DNA of 64,000 nt, from NCBI RefSeq assembly GCF_006345805.1, contig NC_043009.1:72230001-72294000 (forward strand), in the 5' to 3' direction. Below are positions 5,286 to 63,950 of the stretch, piece after piece (the first letter of the stretch is position 1; each line of letters starts with the position of its first letter). The stretch is from Octopus sinensis (lineage: Eukaryota). The notes under the pieces are model-generated. The model was not told where the DNA came from. It worked only from the letters and a program-made list of their open reading frames with translations, and searched no databases. The translations under genes and the position numbers were made by a program.

Positions 5286-6752
5286 TCACATAATGTGGAA
5301 GACAACTGGACAATCTGCTGAGAGCCACTGACCAGATCTGTGGATGGACCAAAGTCCCATCTCGATCCAAGGTAACGTGGTGGTGGAACAATGTGGTTGA
5401 CAGGGCTATTAGAGAAAAGAAACGGGCTTGGAGGGACTGGAAGAATGGAGGTAGCAGGGAATTGTATCAGACTGCCAGAAGGGAAGCTAGGAGACAGGTT
5501 TATTTAGCCAGAAGGGAAGCAGATAAGAAAAAATTTGCCAATGTTCTGCGCCGTGAGGACCAAAGACTTGAGGTATTTCATGTTGCAAGACAGTGTGTGA
5601 GAGAGAATCATGATGTGGTAGGAGAGAAATGTGTTCGCATGGATAATGGTTCACTTGCGCTAAATGAGGATGCAAAGCGAGAGGTTTGGAAACACCATTA
5701 TGAGAGGCTGCTCAGGAGCAATAAACACTGAAAATGCACAGAGACCATCTTCCGCCACATTCCAGGGAGAAAAACTAGAAATAGTTGATAGCTTCCATTA
5801 ACTAGGTGACCAAGTCAGTAGCCGGGGTGGGTGTGCTGAAAGTGTAACTGCTAGGGTAAGAATTGCCTGGGCAAAGTTCAGAGAGCTCTTACCTCCGCTG
5901 GTGACAAAAGGCCTCTCGCTCAGAGTAAAAGGCAGACTGTATGACGCATGTGTACGAACAGCCATGCTACATGGCAGTGAAACATGGGCTGTGACTGCTG
6001 AGGATATGCGTAAGCTCGCAAGAAATGAAGCCAAAAGTTGGACCTAAGAAGCATCAATTGTGGTTTGCGCTGGTATACTCATGTGGCGAGAATGGATGAA
6101 GATAGTTGTGTGAAAAAGTGCCACACCCTAGCGGCTGAGGGAACCTGTGGAAGAGGTAGACCCAGGAAAACCTGCGACGAGGTGGTGAAGCATGACCTTC
6201 GAACTTTAGGTCTCACCGAGGAAATGACTAGAGACTGGGACCTTTGGAAGTATGCTGTGCGTGAGAAAACCCGGCAGGACAAGTGAGGCCATAACCCGTG
6301 CCCTCTACATGGGATGTAGCCAGTCCACTTATGCATACCTTTCCTTCTTGGGACACAAAACTCTACTTGTGAAGACCTGTTGAGGCAAGTGAAAATGAAA
6401 ATCAAAATCGTAATCGATCAACATCAATGGAATTTGTAGCTGTGATACCAGTGCTGGTGGCACGTAAGAGACCCATCCGAACGTGGCCATAGCCAGCACC
6501 GCCCTGACTGGCCTCTGTGCCGGTGGCACGTAAAAAGCACCATCCGATCGTGGCCGTTGCCAGCCTCGTCTGGCACATAAAAAGCACTCACTACACTCAC
6601 GGAGTGGTTGGCGTTAGGAAGGGCATCCAGCTGTAGAAACACTGCCAGATCAGACTGGGCCTGGTGCAGCCTTCTGGCTTCCCAGACCCCACTTGAAACG
6701 TCCAACCCATGCTAGCATTGAAAATGGACGTTAAACAATGATGATGATGATG
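5286..6752 (+). mobile_element. RTE-clade LINE copy 1, 5'-truncated with an internal deletion that removes the RT domain
   Basis: Collinear with RTE copy 2 at 7630-10278 apart from a 1024-bp deletion at 5709-5712 and smaller deletions; ends in (ATG)n tail at 6738-6752. Confidence 0.9.
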
Positions 6753-6988
6753 CTTGGCTACATAGACCATAAGTTTGTGATCTGCACTGTCAACTTAGAT
6801 AGGCAAGGACATAGCTACTGGAAGCTGAATGCATTACATCTGGCATGCCAAGATTACAGAGACCAGATTAGAAAATTTGTTTGGTGAGCATTGACAAGGT
6901 TAGTCATCAACAACAAATTTAGTAAGGCATTGACGGTAGAAAGAAATAGAGGGCAAACTTGGTTAAAAACTTGTAGATAAGGCGCTGG

Positions 6989-9900
6989 AAAATGGGTAGA
7001 TAAGGTAATAGAGGTAATCAGAGTAAGTGATAGAATACTTAAGATTAGATTAGTGCTTCATCATGGATTAGCAACCATTATATCGGCCTATGCCCCTCAG
7101 CTGGGGCTACCCGATGGACAGAAAGACCGATTCTATGACACCCTACTGCAGACTACCTCGCTGACGAATGACAGAGACCTTCTCTTTGTGGCTGGTGACT
7201 TCAATGGTCATGATGGACGACATGCTGGGGGCCGCCATGGTGTACATGGAGGCTATGGTTATGGTTCCCGCAACGAGGAGGGAACCAGGCTGCTGGAGTT
7301 CTGCGATGCAAATGATCTTATGGTTTGCAACATTAACTTCAGGAAACCTACTAGTCACCTACCGATCGGGCCGACATACCAGCCAAATTGACTACATCCT
7401 TGCCAGGAAAAGGGAAAAGATGGCTGCTTATAAATGCCAAAACCTTTCCTGGCGAAGAATGTTCCCCACAACATAGACTGGTAGTTAGTGACTTTAGGAT
7501 CAGGACTAAGAGGACGACCAGAAGACGACCAACATGGAGAAGAAGGATCTGGAAGTTTAAAGATCCTGCGAATGAACAAAGATTTAGACACATATTACTT
7601 GAAGCCTTTGACGAAGTAGATATAGCTTCACATGGGGTAAAAGACAACTGGAGGTTTCTAAGGGACAACCTGCTGAGAGCCACTGACCAGATCTGTGGCT
7701 GGTGCAAAGTCCCCTCTCAAACCAAAATAACGTGGTGGTGGAACAATGTTGTAGACAGGGCTATTAGAGAAAAAAGACTGGCTTGGAAGGACTGGAAAAA
7801 TGGTGGTAGCAGGGAATTGTATCAGATTACCAAAAGAGAAGCTAATAGACAGGTTTATTTAGCCAGAAGGGAGGCAGGTAAGAAAAAATTTGCCAATGTT
7901 CTGCGCTGTGAAGACCAAAGACTTGAGGTATTCCATGTTGCAAGACAGTGTGTGAGAGAGAATCGTGATGTGGTAGGAGAGAAATGTGTTCGCATGGATG
8001 ATGGCTCACTTGCGCTGAATGAGGATGCAAAGCATGAGGTTTGGAGACACCATTATGAGAGGCTGCTAAATAAGGAAAATAAATGGGATAAAGAGAGTCG
8101 ACCCAACAGAGGGACCAGCTATCCAAGTTGACAGTTCCTTAGTAGTTAAGGCAATTACAAGCATGAAGACAGGGAAAGCTCCAGGCCTATCAGGAATTAC
8201 TGCAGAGATGTTTAAAATATCTGGTAGTGTCGGCTATAGCTTAGTCACCCATATAGTTAACCAGGTGATACACGAAGGAGTCATACCCAATAACTGGGGT
8301 AGCAGCATAATAGTCAACTGCTACAAAGGTAAAGGTGATGCCCTAGATACAAATAATTACAGAGGTATCAAGATGTTGGATCAGGTAATGAAGGTTACGG
8401 AGAGGGTCATAGCCCAACTGATTAGAGAGAGAGTCAGCTTGGATGAGGTGCAGTTTGGTTTCGTGCCAGGGAAAAGCACCACTGATGCCATATTTCTGGT
8501 GAGACAGCTGCAGGAGAAATACCTAGCCAAAGATAAGCCCCTGTACCTGGCTTTCGTTGACATTGAGAAAGCCTTCGACAGGGTCCCCCGATCCCTTATC
8601 TGGTGGTCAATGAGGAAACTAGGGATACTTGAATGGTTAGTGAGAGCTGTGCAAGCCATGTAAGTAAGGTGAGGGTTGGCAACGAGTACACTAAAGAATT
8701 CAGGGTAGAGGTAGGGGTTCACCAACGTTCAGTCCTCAGCCCCCTCCTATTTATCATAGTCCTCCAGGAAATAACGGAGGAATTCAAGACAGGATGTCTC
8801 TGGGAGCTCCTCTATGCTGATGACCTTGCTCTAATTGCTTCAAGTTTCAAGTGTGGAGACAAGGATTAGAATCGAAGGGCCTAAAGATCAACCTAGCCAA
8901 AACCAAAGTCCTAATAAGTAGGAAGGTAGGCAAATCACAAACGCCTCAGGTAGATGGTCCTGTTAGATCTGTAGAAAAGGTGTAGCTAGAAACTCTATAA
9001 GATGCACCAAGTGTAAGCTATGGACACATGAGGTGCAGCAATGTCAAAGGAAGGCTAACTGGGAAGATAGTTTTTGTATGTGGCAGATGCTCAGGAGCAA
9101 TAAACACTGAAAATGCACAGAGACCATCTTCTGCCACATTCCAGGGAGAAAAACTAGAAGTAGTTGATAGCTTCCGTTACCTAGGTGACCAAGTCAGTAG
9201 CGGGGGCGGGTGTGCTGAAAGTGTAACTGCTAGAGTAAGAATAGCCTGGGCAAAGTTCAGAGAGATCTTGCCTCTGCTGGTGACAAAAGGCCTCTCGCTC
9301 AGAATAAAAGGCAGACTGTATGACGCATATGTACGAGCAGCCATGCTACATGGCAGTGAAACATGGGCCGTGACTGCTGAGGATATGCGTAAGCTCGCAA
9401 GAAATGAAGCCAGTATGCTCCGATGGATGTGTAATGTCAGTGTTCATACTCGACAGAGTGTAAGTACCTTGAGAGAAAAGTTGGACCTAAGAAGCATCAA
9501 TTGTGGTGTGCAAGAGAGACGTTTGCACTGATATGGTCATGTAGCGAGAATAGATGAAGATAGTTGTGTGAAAAAGTGCCACACCCTAGTGATTGAGGGA
9601 ACCTGTGGAAAAGGCAGACCCAGGAAAACCTGCGACGAGGTGGTGAAGCACGACCTTCGAACTTTAGGTCTCACCAAGGAAATAACAAGAGATTGAGACT
9701 TTTGGAAGTATGCAGTGAGTGGGAAGACCCGGCAGGACAAGTGAGACTATAACCCATGGTCTCTACCTTGGACGTAGCCAGCCCACTTATGCATACCTTT
9801 CCTTCTTGTGACACAAACCCTACTTGTGAAGACCTGTTGAGGCAAGTGAAAATGAAAATTGAAATCGATCAATGGAAATTGTAGCTGTGATACTAGTGCT

Positions 9901-21100: not shown

Positions 21101-23290
21101 CATCATCATCATTTAGCATCCATTGTCCATACTGATATGGGTTGGATGGTTTGACCAGAGCTGGCAAGGAAGGCTGCACCAGGTTCCAGTCTGATTTGGC
21201 ATGGTTTCTATGGCTTGATTCCCTTCCTAACCCCAACCACTCCGAGAGTCTAATGGGTGCTTTCACATGTCACTGGCATGGGTGCCATTTTCATGTAACT
21301 GGTACCTGCCATGACTGAAATTTTACTTGGCTTGATGAGTCTTCTCCTCAAGTGCAACGTAAGGTCTCTGTCATTGCATCCATGAGGCACAACACTTGAA
21401 AGGAGCTTTTCATGTGTCACCAGCATCAGCCACTTTGCTGCCATGAGGCCAAATGCTTGAAAGGGCTTTTCATGTGCCATCAGCACAAGTGCCAGTTATG
21501 TGACACCTGCATTAGCCACAACTACGATTTCACTTGGCTTGATGTGTCTTCTCAAGCACAGCATATCGCCAAAGGTCTTGGTCACTAGTCATTGCTTCTG
21601 TGAGGCCCAAAGTTTGAAGATCATACTTCACCACTTTGTTCCATGTCCTTCTGGGTTTACGTCTACCACAGGTTTCCTCCACAGTTAGAGATTGGCACTT
21701 CTTTTCACAGCTGTCTTCAAGTTCCATACGCATTCCATGACCATACCAATGCAGTTGTCTCTCTTGCACACCACATCTGATGGCTCTTATGCCTAACTTT
21801 TCTCTCAAAAGGCTTTCAATCTGTGGAGCATGAACTCTGACATTTCACCTCCAGCAAAGCATACTGGCTTCATTTCTTTCAAGCCTACGCATGTCCTCAG
21901 GTAGTCACATGTTTCACTGCCATGTAACGTAGCTGTATGCACACAAGCATCATACAATCTACCTTTCATTCAGGAGAGTCCCTTTATTGCCAGCAGAGGT
22001 AGGAGCTCTCTGACCTTTACCCAGCCTAATCTTATTCTCACAGGTACGCTTTCGGAGCATCCACCTCCTCTACTAACTTGATCACCTAGATAACAGAAGC
22101 TATCTACTACCTCTAGCTTACCCCACTGGCAGTTGATGGAGTCTATTTTCTGTACATTTTTGCTGTTTATTGTACCTGTGCATCTTCCACTCACAAAAGC
22201 AATTTCCCCTGTTAACATTCCTCTGATATTGCTGCACTGCTTACACTGGGTACTTCTTATGGAGTTTCTACCTATGCCTTTCCTACAGATTGAGTAGGGC
22301 CATCTACCTGAAGGGATCTGTGGTTTGTCTGCCTTACTACTTACTAAGACTTTGGCTTTTGCTAGGTTAATACTAAGGCCCTTTGATTCTAGATCTTGCT
22401 TCCATACCTGAAACTTCTCAGCTATAAGAAAATGGTCATCAGCATAGAGATGCTTCCAAGGGCAATCTATCTTAAATGTCTTTATTGCCTGGAGGACTAT
22501 GAGAAACAACAGGGGCTGAGAACTGATCCTTGGTGAGCCCCTACTTGTACCCTGAATTTTTCACTGAACCTCACCTTATTGATAACATCCCTGTACATAG
22601 CTTGTACAGCTCTTACCAACCTCTCATCTATCCCTATTTCCACATTAACCACCAGCTAAGGGATCGGGGGACCCTGTCAAAGGCTTTCTCCAAGTCAACA
22701 AATGCCAAGTATAGCATTTTATCTGCAGCTGCCTCACCAGAAATATAGCATCAGTGGTGCTTCGCCTTGGCACAAAACCAAACTGCATCTCATCGAGCCT
22801 AACTTCCTCTCCCTAATTAGTTGAGCTGTGACCCTCTCCATAACTTTCATCGCCTGATCCAACAATTTGATACCTCTGTAATTATTGTTATATAAGGCCT
22901 TACCTTTACCTTTGTAGCAGATGACTATGGTGCTGCTACACTAGTCATTGGTATGACATCTTCATGAACCACCTGATTTACAATACAGGTGACTAAACCA
23001 CAACGAACACCACCAGATATTTTAAGCATCTCAGTGGTGATTCCTGATGGGCTGGGGGCTTTCCCTGTCTTTATATTCTTCGTGACTTTATCTACCAAGG
23101 TATTGTTGATTCAGCTAGCTGGTCCCTCAATTGGGTCAACATTTGGCAGACTCTCCTCCTCCCATTCATTCTCTACATTCAGCAGTCTTTCATGGTAGCA
23201 TTTCCAAGCCCCTTTCTTTGCAGAATCATTAAATGCAGGTGTGCCGTCATCCATGTGGACAAAATGGTTTCTTATTTGGGTATATGACCA
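21101..23290 (-). mobile_element. Decayed RTE-clade LINE (RT and 3' UTR)
   Basis: (CAT)n tail at 21101; minus-strand HLYADD, GRWPYSICRKGIGRNS, KLEVVDSFCYLG, YHERLLNVENEWEEESLPNVDP. Confidence 0.85.
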
Positions 23291-38225: not shown

Positions 38226-39590
38226 TCATGACTTCTCTTCTCTATGTGTTCGTTTGTGTACAGTTACATGGCTACTTTGTGTGAATGTTTTACCACAGAT
38301 ATCACAGCGAAATGGTTTCTCTCCTGTATGTATACGTCTATGTGCAGTTAAAGTGCTATTGTGAGAGAATGGTTTACTACAGATATCACAATGATATGGC
38401 TTCTCTCCTGTATGAACATATTTGTGACCAGATAGATGGATATTTTGAGAGAATGATTTACCACAGATATCACAACGATATGGTTTCTCTCCTGTGTGAA
38501 TGCTTTTGTGTTGGTTTAGATTGCTATTCACTGAGAATGATTTACCACAGATATCACAGTGATATGGCTTCTCTCCTGTATGAACACGCTTGTGCGTACT
38601 TAGAGAGTTACTGTTAAGGAATGATTTACCACAGATATCACAGTGATATGGCTTCTCTCCTGTGTGAGCAAATTTATGTCGAGTTAGACTGTTAAATTGA
38701 GAGACTGATTTACCACAGATATCACACTGATATGGCTTCTCTCCTGTATGAGCAAATTTATGTTGAGTTAGACTGTTAAATTGAGAGACTGATTTATCAC
38801 GGATATAACATTGGAATGGTTTCTCTTCTGTATGAATACGCTTGTGTCGAGTTAGATTGCCATTTACAGAAAATGATTTACCACAGATATCACAGTAGTA
38901 TGGCTTCTCTCCTGTATGTGTACGTTTGTGTAAAATTAAATCATACATCATAAAAAATGATTTGCCACAGATATCACAGTGACATGGCTTATCTCCTGTA
39001 TGAATTCGTCTGTGTGCTGCTAAGCGACTGCTTGCACAAAAAGATTTGCCACAGATAGAACAATGATATGGATTCTCTCCCGTGTGAATAAGTTTGTGTT
39101 TACTCAAACTATCTGGATTAGAGAATGATTTACCACAGATTTCACATTGGTACGGTTTCTCTCCTGTATGGATACGTTTGTGTTTACGTAGGTTGCTATT
39201 TAGAGAGAATGATTTACCACAGATTTCACATTGGAATGGTTTCTCTCCTGTATGAATACGTATGTGTCTAATTAAAGCAGCTGTATGAGTGAATGATTTA
39301 CCACAAACATTACATTGATATGGTTTCTCTCCTGTATGAATACGTATGTGTCTAGTGAGAATGCTTTTTCCAGAGAACGATTTACCACAGATATCACACT
39401 GGAACAGTTTCTCTCCTGTATGAATATATGTATGAGTTATAAGGTCACCTTTTCCGGAGAATGACTTCTTACAGAAATCACATTGATAAGATGGGTTACA
39501 TACATCCATTGGCTTCTCATCAATAAAACCAGTCCTTGTAGACTCTGATTCACATTTAATATTCTCCCCACACAATTCATTTTCCATCAT
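38226..39590 (-). CDS. Tandem C2H2 (Kruppel-like) zinc-finger protein, 454 aa, 15 repeats (14 canonical, 1 degenerate), single coding exon
   Basis: Intact ORF of CxxC..HxxxH-TGEKP repeats. The ORF track starts at GTG 39608, but the first ATG is 39590 with an in-frame TGA upstream. Acceptor ttttttctttttatttcag at 39949-39950. Confidence 0.95.
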
Positions 39591-40107
39591 ATTTCTTTCT
39601 TTCACCACAATGTATGAATCCTTTTTTGCTTTTCAGTTTTAACTTTTTATTCCACACTGGTATTTATTGTGATATATTTCACTGAACTGGAATTTTTGTC
39701 AATATCTGAAGAGGCTGAGAATTCCTTTCTTATTCCAAATACATTTGAAGGTGAAAACCATCTTGAACACATAACAGACAGTGAAGTCAAGAAATATCAC
39801 AAAGAATTTCAGTTAAATCAAATAATTCACAGCAACTCTTCCACAGATATCTCTTCTGTATAAAAAACTTCCTTTCAACTTTCAAAGACAGTAATGTTGA
39901 TGTATCTCTCGTATAAAAGTTTCTTTAATGCCACTGTAATTTAGATGTCTGAAATAAAAAAGAAAAAATTTCCGTTAGAAAGGATAGAGCAGTGGAAATT
40001 TTAATATATTTGTAGAACGAGCTTTTGCTATACTCCTTCACATGAACAATTAAAACGTTTACTTTTTAATTTGGTGAGAAAATTACATTATACAACTTTA
40101 TGGGAAC

Positions 40108-41973: not shown

Positions 41974-42027
41974 CCATAGGTATAAAGTCTTCATAGGTAT
42001 AAAGTCTTCCATAGGTATAAAGTCTTC
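41974..42027. repeat. 3x tandem 17-18-bp repeat CATAGGTATAAAGTCTT(C)
   Basis: Units at 41975, 41992 and 42010. Confidence 0.9.
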
Positions 42028-45000
42028 TGGCAAGGTAACATGGATGGTGTAGGGGGTGTAGGCATTCTCCTTGCGGAGAAATGGGTGGATAAGGTCATAG
42101 AGGTTGTCAGGGTTTGCGATAGAGTGCTTAAGCTCAATTTAGTCCTACAGAGTGGCACAGCTACGATTATCTCCGCCTGTGCCCCACATGATCAGAAGGA
42201 CCACTTTCATGATACCCTTCTACAGGCTACCTCAAAGACTAGTGGCAAGGACCTCATCTTTGTGGGTGGAGACTTTAATGGGCATGTTGGGTGGGAATCG
42301 GGTATCTTCACTGGGGTACACGGTGGCCATGGTATTGGCACCAGAATTGATGAGGGAACTAGACTACTGGAATTCTGTGATGCATGTAACCTTTTAATCT
42401 GCAACACTAACTTCAGGAAGCCTGACTGCCACCTTATAACCTATCAGTCAGGAGACTCCGCTAGCCAAATAGACTTCATCCTCACCAGACAGCGGGATGC
42501 AGGGTCGCTTTTAAATACAAAGACCCTCCCGGGTGAAGAATGTATCCCTCAGCATGGCTAATCATTAGTGACTTTAAGCTTGAGGCCAGAAGGACTCCAA
42601 GAAACAGACCAATCCAGAAAAGAAGGATTTGGAAGCTAAAGAACCCTTCACATGGTCAGAGATTTAGGGACATCCTCATCAAGAAATTTGATGAGAGGGA
42701 GGAGGAGCTTCAGATGTTGGACATAGAAGGTAGCTGGGAATTCCTACGGGACAGCTTGCTGAGCGCCACAGACCAAGTCTGTGGATGGTGCAAAGTCCCT
42801 TCCAGACCTAGAGTTACGTGGTGGTGGAATAGTGCAGTAGACAAAGCCATTAGTGCAAAGAGGCCTGGAAAGCCTGGAGGGATGGGGGTAGCAGGGAACT
42901 GTACCAGGTAGCCAAAAGGGAGGCTGGGCAGCAGGTATACATAGCCAAAGATGTAGCAGAAAAGAAGAAGTTTGCCAATGTCCAGCAACGTGAGGACCAA
43001 AGAACTGAGGTATTTTGGATTGCCAGACAGTGTGTGAGAGAAAATAGTGATGTTACAGGAGAGAAATGTGTCCACATGGATGATGGGGCACTTGCTTTTA
43101 ATGTTGGTGAAAAGAAAGAGGCTTGGAGAAGCCATTATGAAAGGCTGCTGAATGTGGAGAATGAATGGGAGGAGGAGAACCTGCCAAATATTGACCCAGT
43201 AGAGGGACCAGCTATCCGAATAGACAGCTCCCTTGTAGTTAAGGCAATTAAGGGTATGAAACCAGGTAAAGCCCCCGGCCCATCAGGAATCACTGCTGAG
43301 ATGCTTAAAACAGCTGGTTAAGTGGGCTATGGCCTAGTCACCCACATTGTAAACCAGGTAGTTCATAATGGAGTCATACCCAATGACTGGCGTAGCAGCA
43401 CCATAGTCAACTGCTACAAGGGTAAGGGTGATGCTCTAGATAGAAATAACTACAGGGGTATTAAACTGTTGGATCAGGTGATGAAGGTCACAGGGAGGGT
43501 CATAACCCATTTCATTAGGGAGAGAATTTGCTTAGATGAGATGCAGTTCGGTTTTGTGCCGGGTAGAAGCACCACTGATGCTATATTCCTAGTCCGACAA
43601 CTGCAGGAGAAGTACCTTGCTAAAGATAAACCCCTCTACATAGCTTTCGTGGACTTGGAGAAAGCCTTTGACAGGGTCACCCGATCCCTTATCTGGTGGT
43701 CGATGCGGAAACTGGAGATTGACGAATGGCTAATAAGGGCTGTACAGGCCCTATACAGAGAGGCTGTCAGCGAATATAGTGAAGAATTCCGGGTAGAAGT
43801 AGGTGTACACCAAGGCTCAGCCCTCAGTTCCCTTTTATTCATCATAGTCCTCCAGGCAATAACAGAGGAATTCAAAACGGGTCGTCCCTGGGAGCTCCTC
43901 TATGCTGATGACCTGGCTCTCATAGCAGAATCACTACCGGAACTAGAAAAGAAATTTCGGGTGTGGAAGCTAGTTTTAGAATCAAAGGGCCTTAGAGTAA
44001 ATGTAGCAAAGACCAAAGTTATAGTAAGCAGAAAGGCGAACTCAGCACACACACCCTCGGGCAGGTGGCCCTGCTCGATCTGTAGGAAAGGTGTAGGTAG
44101 AAACTCCATAAGATGCACCCAGTGTAAGCTATGGACGCATAAGAGGTGCAGCAACATCAAAGGGAAATTAACTGATAAGATAGCTTTCATGTGCGGCAGA
44201 TGCACAGGGGCAATAGACACCAGATTAGAAAACAGATTCCATCACACTTCAGGGGAAGAAACAAGAAGTAGTTGATAGTTTCCGCTACCTAGGTGACCAA
44301 GTTAGTAGTGGAGGTGGATGCTCAAAGAGTGTCACCACTAGAATACGAATAACTTGGGCAAAGTTCAGAAAGCTCTTACCCCTACTGATGACAAAGGTAG
44401 ATTGTATGACGCATGTGTGCGAAGTGCCATGCTTCACGGTAGTGAAACATGGGCTGTGACTGCAGAGGACATGCGTAGACTTGAAAGGAATGAAACTAGC
44501 ATGATCCGCTGGATGTGTAATGTCAGTGTGCACGCACGACAGAGGGTAAGCACCCTGAGAGAAATGCTGGACATAAAAAACATCAGATGTGGTGTGCAAG
44601 AGCGACACTTGCGATGGTATGGTCATGTACTGTGGATGGATGAGGAGAGATGTGTGAAGAAGTGCCACTCCCAAACAGTTGAAGGTATCAGGGGGAGAGG
44701 TAGACCCAGGAAGACATGGGATGAGGTAGTCAAGCATGACCTCAGGCATTGGGCCTCACTGAGGCAATGGCGAAGGACCGAGATCTCTGGAGATATGCTG
44801 TGACTGCAAAGACCCAGGCTGCTTCTTGCACCAGTTCCGCATAGCCCTTGCTCATTCAAAGTACCTTGGATTCCAGAACATCCCGCTGTGCTTGAGGAGA
44901 CCTGTTGAGTCAAGTACATGAACATCGAAATAAATATCAATGGAAATAGTAGTTGTGATACCTGTGCCAGTGGCACATGAAAAGCACCATCCGAACGTGG

Positions 45001-49326: not shown

Positions 49327-49650
49327 GGATCTTTTCCCTTTGAACGGCAGATCAAGAAATTAATTTTTTGTAACTAAACACTTTCAAACTTTGGACTCTG
49401 GTAGAATGTGTCATATAAAACATCTTTTACTCTTAGCATTTTTGAGAAAAACTTATATTTTCAAAGTTATTTCACGTTAAAGTTGTCCTATTTCGGTAAT
49501 TTCAACCAATCAATGACGTGTATTCAGCTGGATAAAATTACTGCTGTTGTTGCCAACAACAACTTCCGGCGGTGTATATTTCGTTTGTCACTGTTATTTA
49601 TGACGTCGTTCGTGCGTTTGGACTGGTTTTAGAGCTAAATTAACGAGTGG
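49327..49650. promoter_or_regulatory. CCAAT-ended repeat copy 3 with adjacent CpG-rich patch; possible promoter region
   Basis: CCAAT at 49506-49510, TGACGT at 49514-49519, ETS-like ACTTCCGG at 49562-49569, and clustered CpGs in an AT-rich background. Confidence 0.3.
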
Positions 49651-49964
49651 TCTTAGGATGTGCTAGAAACAATAGCCAAATCTCCTTTGAATCGAACACC
49701 ATTTTGTCTGAAATATATATATATATTTTTTTTTTACTGAAAGGGCTCCTATCACAGATTTTAAGGGCAAAACAAATTGGCCTAGGTCAGTCCAAAGTTT
49801 GATGGTGAGGAGGGAATAATAAAATCACATTTCCAAAACTTTCTTTGTGTTATAATGCTTTTAATGCAGGAAAGGCTATTTGCTGAGTTTTTTATGTGTA
49901 TATTGTTCAGCAAAAAAAATAAATGATTTATGCATTTATTTGTATGTTTTATTTCATATTTATT

Positions 49965-50465
49965 TTGCATTTGGCTATATGTTTGTGAAAGTAGCACTAT
50001 ATCATTTGCAAAGTTGAGATCTTCTAGAGCTTCCGCATCCGTCCATTCAATGCCTGTTTGGCTTTCAATCGTAGTTTCCTTCATAATCCAATCTATAACT
50101 AGTAGAAATAAGAAGGGAGAAAGTATACAGCCCTGTCGAACTCCTGTTTTTACTCCGAATTTATCTGTAGCTCCGTTTCCATGCAAGACTCGGCATGACA
50201 TTCCTTGGTAAGTTGCTCTTATTATAGATATATACTTATCTGGTATGCGCAGTGCTGCATAATTTTCCATAAGCCTTCCCTATCTACACTATAGAAGGAG
50301 AGGTAGGCCTAAGAACTCGTGGCGGAGATCAACACAAAAGGAACTAGAGAAAGGGGGACAGTCATGGCAGAGTATAAGTACAGAAGCCAAAATTTATGTG
50401 ACATGGAATTCAACCATAAGTGGCCTATACTCCACATTGGAGGGTTAAAGGCATAAAGTAAAGTT
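49965..50465. mobile_element. RTE-clade (SR2-like) LINE pieces joined head to head; mirrored at about 51815-52310
   Basis: Minus-strand RT piece GVRQGCILSPFLFLLVIDWIM..LEDLNFANDIVLL abuts plus-strand 3' end RGRPKNSWRRS.. with a TAAAG-like tail. Confidence 0.7.
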
Positions 50466-50539
50466 CAAAAGTTTAATTCATATTTAATACCAGGGGTTGA
50501 AAAAACAGGATGAAAAATGGGATCCTGAATGAAAAAAGT

Positions 50540-50880
50540 TTAAGGGCCGCTGCCCTATATGGATGATGTGAAGCTTTCAAGTAAGAAAGATGAAGAGATA
50601 GATTTCTTAATACAGACTGTAAGACTCTTCAGCAAAGATATAGGCATGGAATTTGGCATAGATAAGTGTACAATATTAGTCATGAGAAGGGGACAGGTAG
50701 GCAACAGCGAAGGCATCCAATTACAAGATGGTCAGACATTAAAATCATTGAAAGGAGGAGAGAGTTATAAGTATCTAGGAGTATTAGAGTGTGACAGAAT
50801 ACTAACTACAGAAATCAAAACGAAAATTGAGGAGTACATCAGAAGGGTGAGGAAGCTAACGAAGTCAAATTTGCTTATCA
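50540..50880 (+). mobile_element. R4/Dong-like RT fragment; mirrored at about 51430-51740
   Basis: YMDDVKL..LIQTVRLFSKDIGMEFGIDKC..SYKYLGVLE..EYIRRVRKL. Confidence 0.8.
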
Positions 50881-53254
50881 GTTGTTTGACCTTAACCAGT
50901 TGAGCATGTCACTTAGTGGCTGACAATATATGCATCTCTGATCACGAGCAGAAGTAGTGGGGGAGCATCATAGCCATGTGTTGAGAGGGATTCTTTGGGG
51001 TTTGGATAATTCACCTCTGGAAACATGGGTGTTTGGTTTAACATCCTTAAACAACTATTATTCAGAGACCTTTTGAGCAGAATGGGCTACTCAACCTGGA
51101 GAAAATTGTGACTGGGCCCCTCTTGCACATGCACCACAAACATATGTGCGCGACATAGTGATCTCTTGCTTGACTTTGCAAGAGGGGCCCAGTCACAATT
51201 TTCTCCAGGTTGAGTAGCCCATTCTGCTCAAAAGGTCTCTGAATAATAGTTGTTTAAGGATGTTAAACCAAACACCCATGTTTCCAGAGGTGAATTATCC
51301 AAACCCCAAAGAATCCCTCTCAACACATGGCTCCCCCACTACTTCTGCTCGTGATCAGAGATGCATATATTGTCAGCCACTAAGTGACATGCTCAACTGG
51401 TTAAGGTCAAACAACTGATAAGCAAATTTGACTTCGTTAGCTTCCTCACCCTTCTGATGTACTTTTGATTTCTGTAGTTAGTATTCTGTCACACTCTAAT
51501 ACTCCTAGATACTTATAACTCTCTCCTCCTTTCAATGATTTTAATGTCTGACCATCTTGTAATTGGATGCCTTCGCTGTTGCCTACCTGTCCCCTTCTCA
51601 TGACTAATATTGTACACTTATCTATGCCAAATTCCATGCCTATATCTTTGCTGAAGAGTCTTACAGTCTGTATTAAGAAATCCATCTCTTCATCTTTCTT
51701 ACTTGAAAGCTTCACATCATCCATATAGGGCAGCGGCCTTAAACTTTTTCATTCAGGATCCCATTTTTCATCCTGTTTTTTCAACCCCTGGTATTAAATA
51801 TGAATTAAACTTTTGAACTTTACTTTATGCCTTTAACCCTCCAATGTGGAGTATAGGCCACTTATGGTTGAATTCCATGTCACATAAATTTTGGCTTCTG
51901 TACTTATACTCTGCCATGACTGTCCCCCTTTCTCTAGTTCCTTTTGTGTTGATCTCCGCACGAGTTCTTAGGCCTACCTCTCCTTCTATAGTGTAGATAG
52001 GGGAAGGCTTATGGAAAATTATGCAGCACTGCGCATACCAGATAAGTATATATCTATAATAAGAGCAACTTACCAAGGAATGTCATGCCGAGTCTTGCAT
52101 GGAAACGGAGCTACAGATAAATTCGGAGTAAAAACAGGAGTTCGACAGGGCTGTGTATACTTTCTCCCTTCTTATTTCTACTATATAGATTGGATTATGA
52201 AGGAAACTACGATTGAAAGCCAACAGGCATTGAATGGACGGATGCGGAAGCTCTAGAAGATCTCAACTTTGCAAATGATATAGTGCTACTTTCACAACAT
52301 ATAGCCAAATGCAAAATAAATATGAAATAAAACATACAAAAAATGCATAAATCATTTATTTTTTTTGCTGAACAATATACACATAAAAAAGTAGTTATAT
52401 TATTTGTCAAAATAACAGTAATTTTAGGATTTGTGTGTTTGTGAAATAACATATAAACTGAAATTTAAGTGCTTGAATTTAATGTTCGCGAGCCTCTTTG
52501 GGGTTGTGACCCATAGTTTAAGAAGCGCTGATTTAGAGCAAATGGTTTATTTTTCTCTTACTATTTCTGAACAGATACCCTGTTTTTACCTTCCTTGCTA
52601 TTAAAGAGAGGGGGATCAAAGAGAAGATGTATATTAGAGGGGATAGCAAGTTCCCTTGGAAAATCTCTTTTGATATTAATTTTCCCTAAAATGGTCTCAT
52701 CTGAGTAGAGGTTTCTTCATGCTAAAGCTTATTAACTCTTTTATGTTGTCTGCTATACTGAATATATTCAAACATTCATTTACACATGAGTGTGGTATCA
52801 TATCATAGGCTTTCCTATAATCTATTCATGCTATTGTTAGAGTTTTCTTTCTAGCTTTTACTTCATTTAGAACTGCTTTTTCTATGTATAATAAACAAAG
52901 AAAATTTTATAATAAAAGAAAATCAAAATACCTGTTCCATTTTGGGAAGGTTTCAATTCTTTTCTCAACTTTTTGAACAGAAAACAAGCAAATATGAGCC
53001 ATCCAAGGAATATAACATAAGATACCACCAGAAGAACAATAGGAAAAATAATCGTTTGACTTCATTTCAGGCAAAGCACCAAGGAAGTAATTGCGAGTGC
53101 CTTAGTGAATAGAAATACACACACGGCAATGAAGGCGGAATACTTTCTTGAGAGAGAATTGTCTGGAAAAGATCATGTAAGAGTATTATAAGATTTTAGA
53201 TATCATGATGGAGAATTATCAGATGAGAAGACAATGTGTTGTTAGAATCAGTAA

Positions 53255-56993: not shown

Positions 56994-58745
56994 CTAGCAG
57001 AGATACCCAGCGGTTGTCCCGGTTACATTCAATAGAAGAATTATTTTTTTTCTGTTATATAATATATATATATATAGTATATATATATATATATGGATAC
57101 CACACACACACACACACACACACAAAATATATGTATATTAATATAAAATACATGAAAGTACATGAAGTTTGTTAAAAAAAAGGGGATCGTGTATATACCT
57201 CCTGGCTGTTGAGATTATAACACCTCGTTGTAAACAATGTTCCTTGTTTTTCCTTGTGGAGCATATACAAAAAGGTTCTTTTGGTTCCTACTCTTGAGCA
57301 GCCAACATACAGTTGCCTATGCGAGAAGAGCAGGGCTCTTCCAAGAGAAGACCAGCTACAGAGGGGTTTGACCCTGAGATTTGTTAATGGACATGGCAAA
57401 GCTGACACGAAGGGAGAATTGCAGTCTTCTGAATGTAAATGGAATTTCTGCTCCTGATGGAGTAAGAAGAAATCTGGAATAAAGACGTCATCACCTTTTC
57501 CACATCCAGAAAGAATGATCGCCTTGATAACGTGTGAGTGATATCATTTTCTTTATCACCAGTCGTGTTCCATTGCAAAGTGTTGGTGGTTCCAGATTGC
57601 GGAGTAGCATTACAGGAGTTCCAACTTTAAGTGGTGATATGTGTGGAGGTAGTCGAGGAGGCTCCAGTGAATTGAGAAATCCGAGGAGTTAGTACAACTT
57701 CATTTATATCCGGAATTGTATCAACAGACTTGTAAGTGTGTATAGTGCCGGGAAGAGAATGCATTAGCTGTTGATTAATTTGTTAACAGTGACGTTTTTG
57801 GAGCTAATATTGCTCTTCACACAGCCAATTGTGATTTGGTAGTTTTGTGTGAAGCTGGGAAAGACTTTGTATTTGAGGTCATCTAGAATTAACAACAGAG
57901 GAAAATGACCACACTTCCATTGTCCTGCAGCATCGAGAGGCATCTTGCCTTCACAAGTGTCAAAATGTCCTGTGCAAACTTTGTGGACATTTGTCGCCGT
58001 GTAGCTGAGCTCTCATGTTAGTGGTGAGACTAAAGATTGTAACATGATGCCACAGGGTAGAGGGACTTTAGGCATGCTTGAACTTCATCAGCTCTAGTGT
58101 CTTTCGGAATGACAGGAAGAGTTTGCCTGAAATCACTGACAACAGAAGCGTTTACACCTCCCATTGGAGCCTGACAGTCTCGGATGTCTTTCAGGGCTCT
58201 ATCTAATGCTCCAAGCTCCCTTGTGAGCCATAGTGCACTCATCCCAGACAATTACATAAACACATTTAAGTACTTGTCCCTGATCAGAGCTTTTGTTGAT
58301 GTTGCATGAATGCATTTCGGATGCTTGCTAATTGAGAGGGAGTTTAAAAGTTGAGTGTGCTGTCCTGCCACCGTGTAACAAAGTAGCTGCAATGTCAGAG
58401 GAGGCTACAGCTACTGCAATGTCCTGATGCTACCTAACTTCTGCAAGGAGAAGCTTTGTAATAAATGTTTTTCCTGTCCCTCCAGGAGCATCGAGGAAGA
58501 AGATTCGTCCCTCGCGTTGGCGTACACTGTTAAGAATAGTTCTGTAGGCTGCAGCTGGTCCGGAAGTAATTAGGCTCATTTTCAACAATGTACTTTGAAA
58601 GCACTTGAGTGTCGTAGGTTGTTTCACGAATGACAGCAGTGTGGGAAGGCTATTTGACCCTGACCTGAATGCTTGTGGCAGGCCATACGTCGACAATTCA
58701 TTTCCACCCAGTTTAGCAATTCTGTCTTCAACGTCAATGAGTGTT
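56994..58745 (-). mobile_element. Helitron 3' portion with a decayed PIF1-type helicase
   Basis: FFLDAPGGTGKTF, VAVASSDIAATLLHGGRTAHSTFKLP, DFRQTLPVIP..ADEVQACLKS, APKNVTV, SFAMSINKSQGQT, QLYVGCSRV; terminus GC-rich near-palindrome then CTAG|T at 56994. Confidence 0.85.
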
Positions 58746-58879
58746 TGTTATAGATTTAATTGAGATACCCTCCATGTCAGGATAGAGCAGTTGAGCTTGG
58801 TGCTGAAGGGGACAATGTTTTTAGATTCCGGTTCGAATGTAAGGCAGGTTTGAAAGTGTTCCCAACAGTTATTAGTTGT

Positions 58880-60501: not shown

Positions 60502-63500
60502 ATTGATTGATTCTAGTTTCAGCTCACGAGCTGTGGCCATGCTGGGGCACCGCCATTTGGTGTTGCTACATGGTTTTACTTCACGAATGCTTTTTAGCAA
60601 CTGCCATTTGGTGCAGTTCGATGCAGAGAGTTCGATGCAGCTGCCCTCATCTGCACCTCCTGCCGTGAAGTTGGTTCATCTGGGATACCTGACAAGAAGA
60701 GATCCAGTTTCATTTTAAAAACATCTGCATCCACCCCATGCAGGTTTCTTAGGTCCTTCGGGAGGATATTGAAGAGCTGTGGGCCTCGGAAGCCCAGGCT
60801 ATCACAGTATCTTGTCCTACATCTTGATGGCAAATTTGGAGTCCAAGGCACCACGCAGTAGCGCCCAGTTCTGGCATTTGTGTAACTCTCGATGCCAAAG
60901 TTTGGGACAAGTCCTTCCAGGATCTTCCAGATGTATATTATGGCATATCTTTCTTGCCTACGCTCCAAGGAATAGAGTTTTAATCTCTTGAGTCTTTCCC
61001 AGTAGCTTACATTCCGCACAGAGGCTATCTTCTTCGTGTAGCTACGTTGGATCGCCTCAAGTTCTGTGATCAACTTGACACTGGATGGTGACCATAGCTG
61101 AGAGCAATAGTCAAAGTGGCTTAGGACAAGTGTCCTCCAGAGGACCATCATGGTTTCTTGTTCTCCTGTTCTAAAGGTTCTGAGAATCCATCCGGCCAGT
61201 CGTCTACATTTCATTGCCAATTTAGCAACATGTACACGAAAGGTTGCGTCATCACTCACGTAAATACCCAGGTCACACACTGATTGTGCCTCTGGGATTG
61301 CAATTCCTCCGGGTCCAGTGTATTCATTGGGTATTGCATTTAGTTTTGCATGCTGATAGCATAAAGCTTGAAACTTTTCAGCATTGAACTGCATGCTATT
61401 CTTTTCAGCCCACTTGTATATTTTGTCCAGCTCACATTGCAGGCGTTTAGTGTCCTCAGGGTTCTGTATTGCCTGTGAAACTTTTGTATTATCTGCATAA
61501 CTTTTGATCGTGGCTCTCTGCATGGCTGAGGGCATGTCTGAGAGGGCCATTATGAACAGTAGTGGTCCCAAAACAGTGCCCTGCGGAACACCGCTCACTA
61601 TTTGCGTGTTAATGGAAGTGGCCCCATTGGCTACTACCACCTGACTTCTATCTTTCAGAAAGTCATGAAGCCATTCTCCCAGTTTTCCAACTATGCTAAG
61701 ATCACGCAGTTTGTGACATATCATTCCATGATCGACTTTATCAAAGGCCTTTGCAAAGTCGAGATATATGACTTCCACATTTGAGTGGTTGAGCAGTCAT
61801 TTCAGCACCCAGTCATAGTGTTGTAGGAGCTGAGTTAAGCAGCTTCTTCCTGGTCGGAAACCATGTTGGGTGTCAGGCAGCAAGTCATTTTCTTCAAGGA
61901 AGGTGATCAGTTTCCTTCTGACTATTCGTTCCATGACCTGCTGATGTGTGAGGTCAGAGAGATAGGTCTGTAGTTCTTGGCCTCCGCTCTGCTACCATAT
62001 TTTACCTTCCTTCAGTTTTCTTGGAAGTTTGCCAGCTGCAAGGAAGCTCTGAAAGAGGAACTGCAGTGGTCTTGCTAGGACTCTCTTACATACTTTTAGG
62101 AGGATTGCCGGGAATCCATCGGGGCCAGTAGCTGAGTCTGTTTTCATTTCATCTATAGCCTTTATTACATCGTCTTCCTTTATATCCATGTAATCTATCG
62201 TCGCCGCCTCTGATTTTATATCTGCAGTGGTAAAGAAGTCAGTTGGATTGGTGATTTGGAAATGCCCAAGGGGTGGAGTGAAACACTCTTGAATTGCTCA
62301 TTCAGTATTTCACTTACCCTCATTGGTTTTCCTGTGAGTGTGCCATCCTTTTCAACGAGTGGCCCTATCTACAGTGCACCGTAGCTGTTTCTTTGGCATA
62401 CCTGTAGAAAGCTCTGGGGTTAGATTTTATGTTGTCTATAGCCCAGGCTTCTTTGTCTGCTCTTTCCTTTCATGGGAGAGTTGCAGACATTTTTCAATTT
62501 CCAACAGTTTTATTCTCAGGCGGGCTTTTCACTGCTTTCAATTTGTTTGTTTAGGCGATTTGAAATTTTTGTACGCCGTCTCATTAAAATTTTCCTCTCT
62601 CTGGGGATTTTGTTCTTGTGTACAGTGGCCTTTCTCTCTGGGACACATTTGTAGCATATGGCTTGCATTACAGACATGAATTGTTGAAGTTTCACGTCGA
62701 TGTCTGGCGAGGAGAGACATTCAGGCCAGTTTTGTTTGAGAATCTCTTTCTCAATTTGTTTCCAGTTTGCCTTATGGAAGTTCAAGCTAGAAAGATTCTG
62801 AGGGTTTCTTGTAGGCTGCCTGTCCATGCTTTCCTTTGGCCCGTACATGGTTGACTCTACCATGTTGTGATCCGAGAGTAGTGTCGGTGTCACTTTCACA
62901 TAATGGATGAGATCCATATTATTTGTGAAGCAGAGATCCAGTGTGTTACCTGCCCTGGTTGGTTGGAGTATTACTTGCTCCATGTACAGGGTGTTGATGA
63001 GGTTCAGGAGGGACGTCGCCTGTCCTCGTTCACATCTTGTCATTCCTGGGAGAGAAAGGCCCTCGGGCCATCTGACATTGGGTAGATTGAAGTCTCCCAT
63101 AAGTACACTTATGTGTTGTTCTAATGTGATTAGAACTTCTATTTTTATAAGGCAGTCTTCAAACTTGCCTACATGGCTTGGGGCATCTGGAGGGCGATAT
63201 GTAGCACACACAACTACATCAAGTTGCCTTATATGTACAATTAGTGTGTCACACACCGAGTTTGAGTATGACAAAAGGACTTGGGGGTGTGATGAGGTCC
63301 TCACGGATGTACATAGCAACTCCTCCATGACTCCTTCTTTTCTGTCGGTCAGTAGTACAACATACCGTGGTATGTGTAATTCCGCATCTGCTATGTCCGG
63401 TTTCAGGTGCGTTTCCGTAAGTGCTATGCATAAGGCTTGATTGCATGCAACAAAATCTCAAGAACGGGATTTTTGTCCTGTTACTGAGTGTTTGCAGTCC

Positions 63501-63950
63501 TCTGATGTTCAGTAGGAGAATCGAGGTGAGGTGTATACTGTTGCCGGCGGTGTCACCTTGGTCTATTTGCTGTGGTGGTCTTGTATATTGTGGGTAGTCC
63601 CATCTGCGAGCTTGGGTTTGATGAAGCCAGGTTAGCTGCTGTACAATCTTTTGTGCCATGCACAAAAAAGATTCTTGTTCAGCAGCTGCCTTTCAACAAC
63701 ATCATGTTGGCAGTTTTGTGCACGCACCACATCTGCGTACCTCCATTTTGGGGCAGGTGGTGCGTGGGTCCATCCCTTTCCTTTGTTAGTTGTTTATGAT
63801 CTGTTTCGTGTCTCTGCGGCAGGGTCCCCGATGTACAAAACGGCAGCCTGCACCTTCCTCTCCATGCCAGCAGGTACCTCTCAGGTAGAACCTACACACC
63901 CATGTGCGCTGTTTGTTTCCATTTTTGGTATAGGATAGTCAGTTTTACTT
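60502..63950 (-). mobile_element. Near full-length CR1-clade LINE (ORF1 CCCH finger, APE, RT), frameshifted
   Basis: ORF1 CRFYLRGTCWHGEEGAGCRFVH; LLLNIRGL, ATYRPP, LMGDFNLP, GNTLDLCF, SDH; GPDGFP; YLDFAKAFDKVDH, SGVPQGTVLGPLLF, YADN (catalytic Asp lost); (AATC)n tail. Confidence 0.9.

What the first reader, a model, noticed from the sequence alone, without database searches (positions are those of the whole stretch)
49888..52390. 2.5-kb near-perfect palindrome made by fold-back of a TE mosaic
Seen: arms of 1240 and 1214 bp around a 49-bp spacer. The arms contain unrelated pieces (two RTE fragments, an R4 RT fragment and another repeat), so this is a locus-level inverted duplication and not a TIR element. 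The differences I could find are nearly all deletions in the right arm (13 bp, 8 bp, one 2 bp and five 1 bp, mostly at short runs), plus one 2-bp insertion and one clear substitution; together they account for the 26-bp length gap. The turn falls at a self-complementary TGCA. Inference: either (a) a very young template-switch inversion about 0.6 kb from the candidate ZNF promoter, able to extrude a cruciform or make ~1.2-kb dsRNA (ADAR or endo-siRNA substrate), or (b) a fold-back chimeric read or MDA artefact. The one-sided indel bias fits either an artefact or a real hairpin poorly read by long-read sequencing.
Basis: partly seen in the sequence, partly recalled or inferred. Interest (0 to 1): 0.8.

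Follow-up and report, generated by a model that had tools for sequence, protein, structure and literature searches.

The report
Young fold-back inverted duplication, octopus
A 1.2-kb stretch of dead transposon debris in an octopus genome assembly has been copied backwards right next to itself, as break-repair "fold-back" events do; it has no evident function, and whether it exists in the animal or only in the assembly cannot be settled without the raw reads.

Summary
The palindrome is in the sequence as described. The left arm is 49888-51127, the spacer 51128-51176 (49 bp) and the right arm 51177-52390. It lies inside gap-free sequence of what is almost certainly the Octopus sinensis PacBio/Hi-C assembly.

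It is a locus-level inverted duplication, not a mobile element. Three independent repeat-family comparisons fix the polarity. The spacer, right arm and right flank are the old, contiguous sequence. The left arm is the new inverted copy.

The centre is a classic fold-back junction. An old repeat copy is cut off internally and joined to its own reverse complement 49 bp back, through 3 bp of microhomology (TGC/GCA). The outer junction at 49887/8 is blunt.

The 12 arm differences are 11 indels and 1 substitution. All 9 that can be polarised are derived in the older right arm. They are therefore most likely unpolished long-read consensus errors, not mutations, and the true arms are probably identical.

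The best reading (about 0.6) is a very recent break-repair or template-switch fold-back duplication with loss of adjacent sequence. The main rival (about 0.35) is a long-read or assembly artefact. No independent reads or related assemblies were reachable. Any function (dsRNA, ZNF regulation) is untested. Interest is low to moderate.

The parts
49888..51127 (+). Left arm: the derived, inverted copy (1240 bp). In order it holds U/F 49888-49958, RT fragment A 49959-50292, B 50290-50458, an unassigned piece 50459-50550, RT fragment C 50551-50869, and E positions 1-262 at 50866-51127.
   Evidence: At all 9 polarisable arm differences it carries the repeat-family state.
51128..51176 (-). Spacer, or fold-back loop. 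It is the continuation of repeat E (family positions about 263-326) on the minus strand, colinear with the right arm. It has a private 15-bp deletion.
   Evidence: BLAST of other E copies aligns window 51430->51125 as one colinear block of E 1-329. It is not the SMRTbell adapter: best local score 7 of 45.
51177..52390 (-). Right arm: the template, in its ancestral context (1214 bp). It carries all the polarisable derived indels, which are most likely unpolished consensus errors.
51125..51127 (.). 3-bp microhomology (GCA on the plus strand, TGC on the minus strand). [quoted passage not shown]
   Evidence: Alignment to 9 family copies, which continue CTGGTGTACCC... where the window reads AAGAGGGGCCC.
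49887..49888 (.). Outer novel junction between the left flank and the inverted copy. It is blunt, with 0 bp of microhomology, and no target-site duplication pairs it with 52390/1.
   Evidence: The left flank 49647-49846 is an old repeat copy, 72-86% identical to its relatives.
51733..52530 (+). Older nested insertion of about 790 bp, flanked by a 7-bp target-site duplication (TAGGGCA / TAGAGCA). It splits one LINE-like fragment into C' (51427-51732) and D (52531-52893). The palindrome's right boundary 52390/1 lies inside this insertion.
   Evidence: In four other loci C and D are contiguous.
52317..52530 (+). Repeat family F, which runs uninterrupted across the right boundary 52390/1.
   Evidence: Other genomic copies match window 52317-52530 (query positions 8-221 of 52310-52530) continuously at 81-85%.

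Best explanation
This is a very recent fold-back (snap-back) inverted duplication in non-coding transposon debris. It is present in the DNA that was sequenced and has no demonstrated function.

Proposed sequence of events:
1. The ancestral locus read, on the minus strand: right flank, F, A, B, C, E, then more of E. (Shown.)
2. A double-strand break or collapsed fork left a 3' end inside repeat E, at family position 329. (Inferred.)
3. That 3' end folded back and annealed through 3 bases (TGC on GCA) 49 bp upstream on its own strand, or on the sister or complementary strand. (The junction sequence is shown; the mechanism is inferred.)
4. A polymerase then copied about 1.24 kb of the adjacent sequence backwards. 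(The copy is shown; the polymerase step is inferred.)
5. The extended end was joined without homology to the other broken end at 49887. At least about 120 bp of E, plus whatever lay beyond it, was lost. (The junction and the missing sequence are shown; end joining is inferred.)

The 11 indels and 1 substitution that separate the arms are assembly consensus errors confined to one arm. The true arms are essentially identical, so the event is much younger than the 2.5-My split between O. sinensis and O. vulgaris.
For: Polarity rests on three independent lines:
- Copies of family E elsewhere are colinear with the right arm plus spacer (E 1-329). The left arm stops at E 262.
- A LINE-like fragment, contiguous in four other loci, is split in the window by a TSD-flanked insertion that spans the right boundary.
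- Family F copies cross 52390/1 without a break.

Junction signatures:
- E is cut internally. Relatives continue for at least 120 bp.
- It is joined to its own reverse complement with 3-bp microhomology. The chance of 3 bp or more is 1/64.
- The second junction is blunt.
- This is the architecture reported for human fold-back inverted duplications: a single-copy spacer plus 2-8 bp of inverted microhomology (PMC3907307). Yeast shows the same for fold-back templated inverted insertions at breaks, where one end is extended by Pol delta and the other is captured by end joining (PMC11724301).

Against an artefact:
- The spacer is genomic repeat sequence, not an adapter.
- Both flanks differ and there is no N in the window.
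- Fold-back artefact reads are symmetric about the read midpoint, have no second junction, and were essentially absent from the PacBio data examined in PMC12870357.
- The derived arm and its novel outer junction sit in the clean, well-polished part of the sequence.

Arm differences are technical:
- Substitutions to indels are 1:11, against 56:5 in natural inverted repeat pairs of the same assembly (Fisher p = 1.4e-8).
- 9 of 9 polarisable changes are derived in the older arm (p = 0.004).
Against: - There are no independent reads, no second haplotype contig and no related assembly. Look-ups were empty or withheld.
- Zero real divergence between the arms is what an artefact predicts.
- One arm, and possibly the spacer, has about 1% indel error. 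That points to thin long-read support exactly where the centre junction lies. Neither a simple real-palindrome model nor a simple artefact model predicts an error-rich older arm.
- Long near-perfect palindromes with short spacers are known to be unstable in vivo (general knowledge).
- Snap-back synthesis of 1.2 kb is far longer than the 5-34 bp seen at yeast breaks.
Confidence: 0.58

Rival explanations
1. It is a sequencing or assembly artefact. The animal has only the spacer, right arm and right flank. A chimeric long read with a polymerase template switch to the complementary strand and back, or a fold-back molecule plus a mis-join or an unpolished gap fill, was built into the contig.
For: - The arms are identical apart from technical-type errors.
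- The error-rich stretch starts at the centre junction, which suggests low-coverage consensus there.
- CLR-era assemblies are known to contain palindromic chimeras (10.1101/173872, listed; general knowledge).
- Findings chosen because they look odd are enriched for artefacts.
Against: - It needs two coordinated novel junctions. A plain fold-back read gives one, is symmetric, and would continue into the inverted right flank.
- There is no adapter at the centre.
- There is no N or scaffold gap.
- The supposedly false arm is the clean one and the true arm is the dirty one, the reverse of what long-read mapping to a false duplicate should give.
- No systematic fold-back artefacts were seen in the PacBio data examined, although only HiFi, MAS-seq and Iso-seq were tested, not CLR.
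Confidence: 0.36
2. It is an old palindrome whose arms are kept identical by arm-to-arm gene conversion, as in sex-chromosome ampliconic palindromes.
For: Near-identity of the arms is compatible with ongoing conversion.
Against: - The arms are 1.2 kb of dead transposon fragments with no gene.
- All differences look technical and one-sided.
- Nothing indicates age.
Confidence: 0.04
3. It is a fold-back or long-TIR transposable element inserted as a unit.
For: The genome does hold hairpin-type repeat families. One example is the family of 49327-49632, which elsewhere forms inverted pairs with 19-117 bp spacers.
Against: - There is no target-site duplication.
- The unit has no other copy in 2.7 Gb; only its separate pieces recur.
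- The right arm is continuous with its flank through two older elements.
- The spacer belongs to one arm.
Confidence: 0.01

Closest known systems
Fold-back inverted duplications with a single-copy spacer (Hermetz et al. 2014, PMC3907307)
   Same: An inverted copy lies next to its template. The single-copy spacer is contiguous with the template. There is short inverted microhomology (here 3 bp; 2-8 bp in patients) where the spacer meets the inverted copy. Sequence beyond the break is lost.
   Different: The scale is very different: 1.2-kb arms and a 49-bp spacer, against arms of about 10 kb to tens of Mb (10,434 bp to 41.7 Mb in the table) and 0.7-70 kb spacers. This one is interstitial, with the far end rejoined locally. 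It was not healed by a telomere or translocation after a dicentric stage.
Fold-back templated inverted insertions at double-strand breaks in yeast (Yu et al. 2024, PMC11724301; see also Al-Zain et al. 2023, PMC10622511)
   Same: The topology is the same. [quoted passage not shown] The result is an interstitial inverted duplication.
   Different: Those insertions are mostly 5-34 bp. Here about 1240 bp were synthesised. The enzymes involved are unknown in octopus.
Fold-back or palindromic chimeric long reads (Heinz et al. 2026, PMC12870357; Pacasus, 10.1101/173872)
   Same: A near-perfect palindrome with arms identical at the level of the true sequence, sometimes with non-mapping sequence at the turn.
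   Different: Artefact reads are symmetric about the read midpoint and have a single junction. Here there is a second junction to unrelated flank, a spacer of genomic origin and no adapter. The library is not known to have been whole-genome amplified.

Membership tests
Fold-back (snap-back) inverted duplication | The inverted copy lies directly beside its template. | tested here: met
   Arms 49888-51127 and 51177-52390.
Fold-back (snap-back) inverted duplication | A single-copy spacer that is the natural continuation of the template arm. | tested here: met
   Window 51430->51125 is colinear with E 1-329 of nine other copies. The left arm ends at E 262.
Fold-back (snap-back) inverted duplication | [quoted passage not shown] | tested here: met
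   3 bp (TGC/GCA), inferred against the family consensus. The chance of 3 bp or more is 1/64.
Fold-back (snap-back) inverted duplication | Loss of sequence distal to the break. | tested here: inconclusive
   Family E continues for at least 120 bp past the break in other loci, and that part is nowhere in the window. However, the ancestral state of this particular locus was not seen.
Fold-back (snap-back) inverted duplication | The structure exists in the organism's DNA, supported by independent molecules. | not testable with these tools
No haplotig was found.
Fold-back / TIR transposable element | A target-site duplication flanks the unit. | tested here: not met
   The flanks read ...TTTGCTGAG | ... 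| GTAGTTATA..., with no direct repeat.
Fold-back / TIR transposable element | Several copies of the whole unit in the genome. | tested here: not met
   Only the window's own two arms match full length. All other hits cover single pieces.
Missed-adapter / fold-back long-read artefact | Adapter sequence, or nothing, at the turn. | tested here: not met
   The spacer is repeat-E sequence. Its best local score against the 45-nt SMRTbell adapter is 7 (the adapter sequence is from my memory).
Missed-adapter / fold-back long-read artefact | A single junction, with arms symmetric to the end of the molecule. | tested here: not met
   The left arm stops at 49888 and joins unrelated sequence, while the right arm continues into its ancestral flank. 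The criterion is from PMC12870357.
Missed-adapter / fold-back long-read artefact | The junctions are absent from independent reads. | not testable with these tools
   No read data were available.
Gene-conversion-maintained ampliconic palindrome | The palindrome is shared with related species while its arms stay identical. | not testable with these tools
   No other cephalopod genome was reachable.

The most novel reading that the evidence does not exclude
The palindrome is real and shows that the octopus germline can repair a break by kilobase-scale snap-back synthesis. That is about 40-250 times longer than the 5-34 bp fold-back insertions at yeast breaks. It would place a perfect 1.2-kb hairpin-forming repeat about 10 kb upstream of a C2H2 zinc-finger coding exon. 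If transcribed, the repeat would be a substrate for ADAR hyper-editing or endo-siRNA production in an animal known for heavy RNA editing.
Probability: 0.07. Interest if true: 0.5.

Novelty: new member of a known kind. Interest (0 to 1): 0.25.

Why it matters
If real, this is a clean, nucleotide-resolved example of an interstitial fold-back inverted duplication in a cephalopod. Its template, loop, microhomology and blunt second junction are all readable. That is useful as a case study of how break repair reshapes transposon-rich genomes, and as a possible hairpin-RNA source.

If it is an artefact, it is a worked example of how to spot one. It also shows that one copy of a recent duplicate in this assembly can remain unpolished, at about 1% indels, which matters to anyone calling frameshifts or dating young duplicates in this genome. 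Either way it does not change what is known about mechanisms.

Tried and rejected
1. Orthologous locus through the ZNF protein. The search for homologous proteins on the 468-aa finger ORF returned only vertebrate, insect and mollusc ZNFs and no octopus orthologue. Dead end.
2. Independent contigs for the novel outer junction. An exact look-up of the 162-aa ORF spanning 49887/8 and a homology search with a 92-aa junction-spanning piece both came back empty.
3. A haplotig or paralogous empty site in the same assembly. Searches with both flanks found only dispersed repeat copies.
4. Genome-wide base rate of such palindromes. Only about 277 kb could be scanned (window plus fetched loci), and the target was the only near-perfect palindrome in it. 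That is too little to constrain the rate.
5. Missed SMRTbell adapter at the centre. Rejected.
6. Heterozygous inversion mis-merged by the assembler. Rejected on logic. An inversion allele would continue E 262 to 263 in the same orientation, not into the reverse complement of E 329.
7. Error-prone copying as the source of the indels. Rejected, because the copy (left arm) has the ancestral state at 9 of 9 sites.
8. Whether the indel-rich zone extends into the unique right flank, which would point to a low-quality patch. Inconclusive. Fragment D has two private deletions (2 and 11 bp) but also 32 private substitutions, which is a natural ratio.
9. The original assembly paper (Li et al. 2020) is not in the library, so the assembler, polishing and gap-filling steps are unknown to me.

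Full report
**Source of the window.** The window is C13:72230001-72294000 of a 2,719,151,902-bp assembly in 13,516 sequences, with C10 = 105,892,736 bp. These figures match the table entry for the chromosome-scale Octopus sinensis assembly of Li et al. 2020: 13,516 scaffolds, 2719.2 Mb, N50 105.9 Mb, GCA_006345805.1 (PMC10700109). From the title of that paper it is a PacBio plus Hi-C assembly. The paper itself is not held, so the assembler and polishing steps are unknown to me. The window contains no N.

The arms are 49888-51127 and 51177-52390, with a 49-bp spacer at 51128-51176. Similarity ends abruptly at both outer ends. The arms differ by nine deletions in the right arm (13, 8 and 2 bp, and six of 1 bp), two insertions in the right arm (AC, C) and one substitution. 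The net difference is 26 bp.

**What the arms are made of.** Searching the arm against its own genome splits it into separate repeat pieces.

| Piece | Window coordinates | What it is |
|---|---|---|
| F | 49888-49958 | repeat family F |
| A | 49959-50292 | reverse-transcriptase fragment (Pfam RVT_1, E = 2.4e-8); copies at 91-96% |
| B | 50290-50458 | further repeat piece |
| (unassigned) | 50459-50550 | 92 bp, no family found |
| C | 50551-50869 | RVT_1 fragment with YMDD (E = 1.5e-4, below the Pfam cut-off); copies at 88-91% |
| E | 50866-51127 | about 93% to its relatives, a young family of roughly 500-700 bp whose copies are 96-99% alike |

No other place in 2.7 Gb matches the arm as a unit. 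The flanks carry no target-site duplication. The arms share private indels relative to their families, at 50247/52033 and 50757/51525. This is therefore one duplication of a pre-existing mosaic, not a mobile element and not two insertions.

**Polarity.** Three independent comparisons show that the spacer, right arm and right flank are the old contiguous sequence, and that the left arm is the copy.
- Nine other E copies align as one colinear block to window 51430->51125, which is E 1-329 running through the right arm and the whole spacer. The left arm matches only E 1-262.
- In four other loci, fragment C is directly continuous with a fragment D. In the window, C' (51427-51732) and D (52531-52893) are separated by a roughly 790-bp insertion bounded by a 7-bp target-site duplication (TAGGGCA / TAGAGCA). 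The palindrome's right boundary, 52390/1, lies inside that insertion.
- Other copies of family F match window 52317-52530 without interruption, straight across 52390/1.

The two novel junctions are therefore the centre (51127/8) and the left outer end (49887/8).

**The junctions.** On the minus strand the old sequence reads ...GTGGTGCATGTGC and then AAGAGGGGCCC..., which is the reverse complement of the left-arm end. All nine relatives continue instead with CTGGTGTACCC... for at least another 120 bp. That continuation is nowhere in the window. The last three bases, TGC, are complementary to the GCA of the TGCA 49 bp upstream on the same strand. A 3' end at that point could pair there and be extended, giving exactly the observed sequence. 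[quoted passage not shown] The outer junction is blunt. The left flank 49647-49846 is an old repeat copy of its own, 72-86% identical to its relatives.

**Mechanism.** The topology has four elements: microhomology-primed fold-back, a loop that stays single-copy, copying of the neighbouring sequence, and capture of the other end without homology. The same topology is described for human fold-back inverted duplications (spacer in 21 of 21 junctions; 2-8 bp microhomology in 13; PMC3907307). It is also described for fold-back templated inverted insertions at yeast breaks (Pol delta synthesis at one end, end joining at the other; PMC11724301; see also PMC10622511). This case differs in scale. Its arms are 1.24 kb, against 5-34 bp in yeast and about 10 kb to tens of Mb in patients. 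It is interstitial, and it appears to have lost sequence at the break.

**The arm differences are not mutations.**
- Natural inverted repeat pairs in the same assembly differ by 56 mismatches and 5 gap openings. The arms differ by 1 and 11 (Fisher p = 1.4e-8).
- At all nine differences where family copies give the ancestral state, the left arm has it and the right arm is derived (p = 0.004).
- A copy cannot be more ancestral than its template, so these changes arose after copying or are errors.
- They sit at short runs or dinucleotide repeats, and include a compensating -AC/+AC pair 28 bp apart.
- Some other young repeat copies in the assembly are similarly rich in indels.

I conclude that the right arm is an unpolished long-read consensus, at about 1% indels. 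A likely cause is that short reads were drawn to the cleaner arm, or that this stretch was filled in late. The true arms are probably identical. With at most one real difference in 1214 bp, the event is younger than roughly 0.65 million generations at 3e-9 per site (the mutation rate is an assumption). That is well after the 2.5-My split from O. vulgaris.

**Real or artefact?**

Against an artefact:
- The centre holds genomic repeat sequence, not an adapter.
- Two coordinated novel junctions are needed. Fold-back artefact reads have one, are symmetric about the read midpoint, and were virtually absent from the PacBio data sets examined by Heinz et al. (PMC12870357). That study did not include CLR data.
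- There is no gap.
- The derived arm and its outer junction lie in clean sequence, while the ancestral arm is the dirty one. This is the opposite of what mapping true reads to a false duplicate should produce.

For an artefact:
- The arms show zero real divergence.
- Consensus support looks thin starting exactly at the centre junction.
- Long palindromes are known to be unstable in vivo.
- Odd-looking findings are enriched for artefacts by the way they are selected.

No independent evidence could be obtained. Junction-spanning proteins are not on record. There is no haplotig. I put a real structure at about 0.6 and an artefact at about 0.35.

**Function.** Nothing indicates one. The arms would fold into an almost fully paired hairpin if transcribed (RNA MFE -2255 kcal/mol, 98% of bases paired), but transcription is untested. 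The only verified ZNF feature is a 468-aa ORF with about 14 C2H2 fingers at 38226-39632 on the minus strand, 10.3 kb from the palindrome. The promoter proposed 0.6 kb away was not testable.

**Verdict.** This is a correctly described, ordinary kind of structural change, or an imitation of one. Its anatomy is now resolved and its reality is not. Interest is low to moderate.

Noticed in passing
window 49327-49632: This is a solo arm of a hairpin-type repeat family. Elsewhere in the genome the family usually occurs as two inverted arms of about 280-306 bp, separated by only 19-117 bp. Examples are C16:29148335-29148965 and C5:121015978-121016584. The window copy stops exactly at the inner end of the arm and lacks its partner, as if it broke at the hairpin centre. 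It lies 255 bp from the palindrome's novel outer junction. Any link between the two is speculation.
   Followed up: partly
window 51128-52390; loci L026 and L029: The assembly contains stretches with about 1% indel error inside young or duplicated repeats, where one copy is clean and the other is not. Users should not read such indels as mutations or frameshifts.
   Followed up: partly
L027 (C9708:~71200-72600) and L032 (C10:~87869100-87870350): Repeat family E (about 500-700 bp, copies 96-99% alike) forms short tandem arrays with a period of roughly 500-590 bp. In L032 there is also an inverted pair at 91.5% identity. The family looks recently active or satellite-like.
   Followed up: no
window 60594-63692, minus strand: An endonuclease ORF (Exo_endo_phos_2) and a reverse-transcriptase ORF (RVT_1) of a LINE. 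At least 39 other genomic copies are 96-97% identical over 1.2 kb, so this is a young and possibly active family.
   Followed up: partly
window 41986-44803 and 5294-9531, plus strand; 21530-23261, minus strand: Three related LINE copies, about 74-76% alike, with endonuclease, RVT_1 and a PHD-finger-like C-terminal motif (PHD E = 3.7e-5 in the 43322-44272 ORF).
   Followed up: partly
window 38226-39632, minus strand: A single open exon of 468 aa with about 14 tandem C2H2 zinc fingers. It fits the large octopus ZNF expansion. Its closest database hits were vertebrate ZNFs at 50-58% identity, and no cephalopod orthologue was returned.
   Followed up: partly
window 58433-58747, minus strand: A fragment of a PIF1-like helicase (Pfam PIF1, E = 1.2e-6), probably a Helitron remnant. 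It is interrupted by microsatellite-rich sequence.
   Followed up: no
window 51733-52530: An older composite insertion of about 790 bp with a 7-bp target-site duplication, inside a LINE-like fragment. It is itself a chimera of at least three unrelated repeat pieces (B, A, F). This suggests an earlier round of template switching or a chimeric retrocopy.
   Followed up: partly
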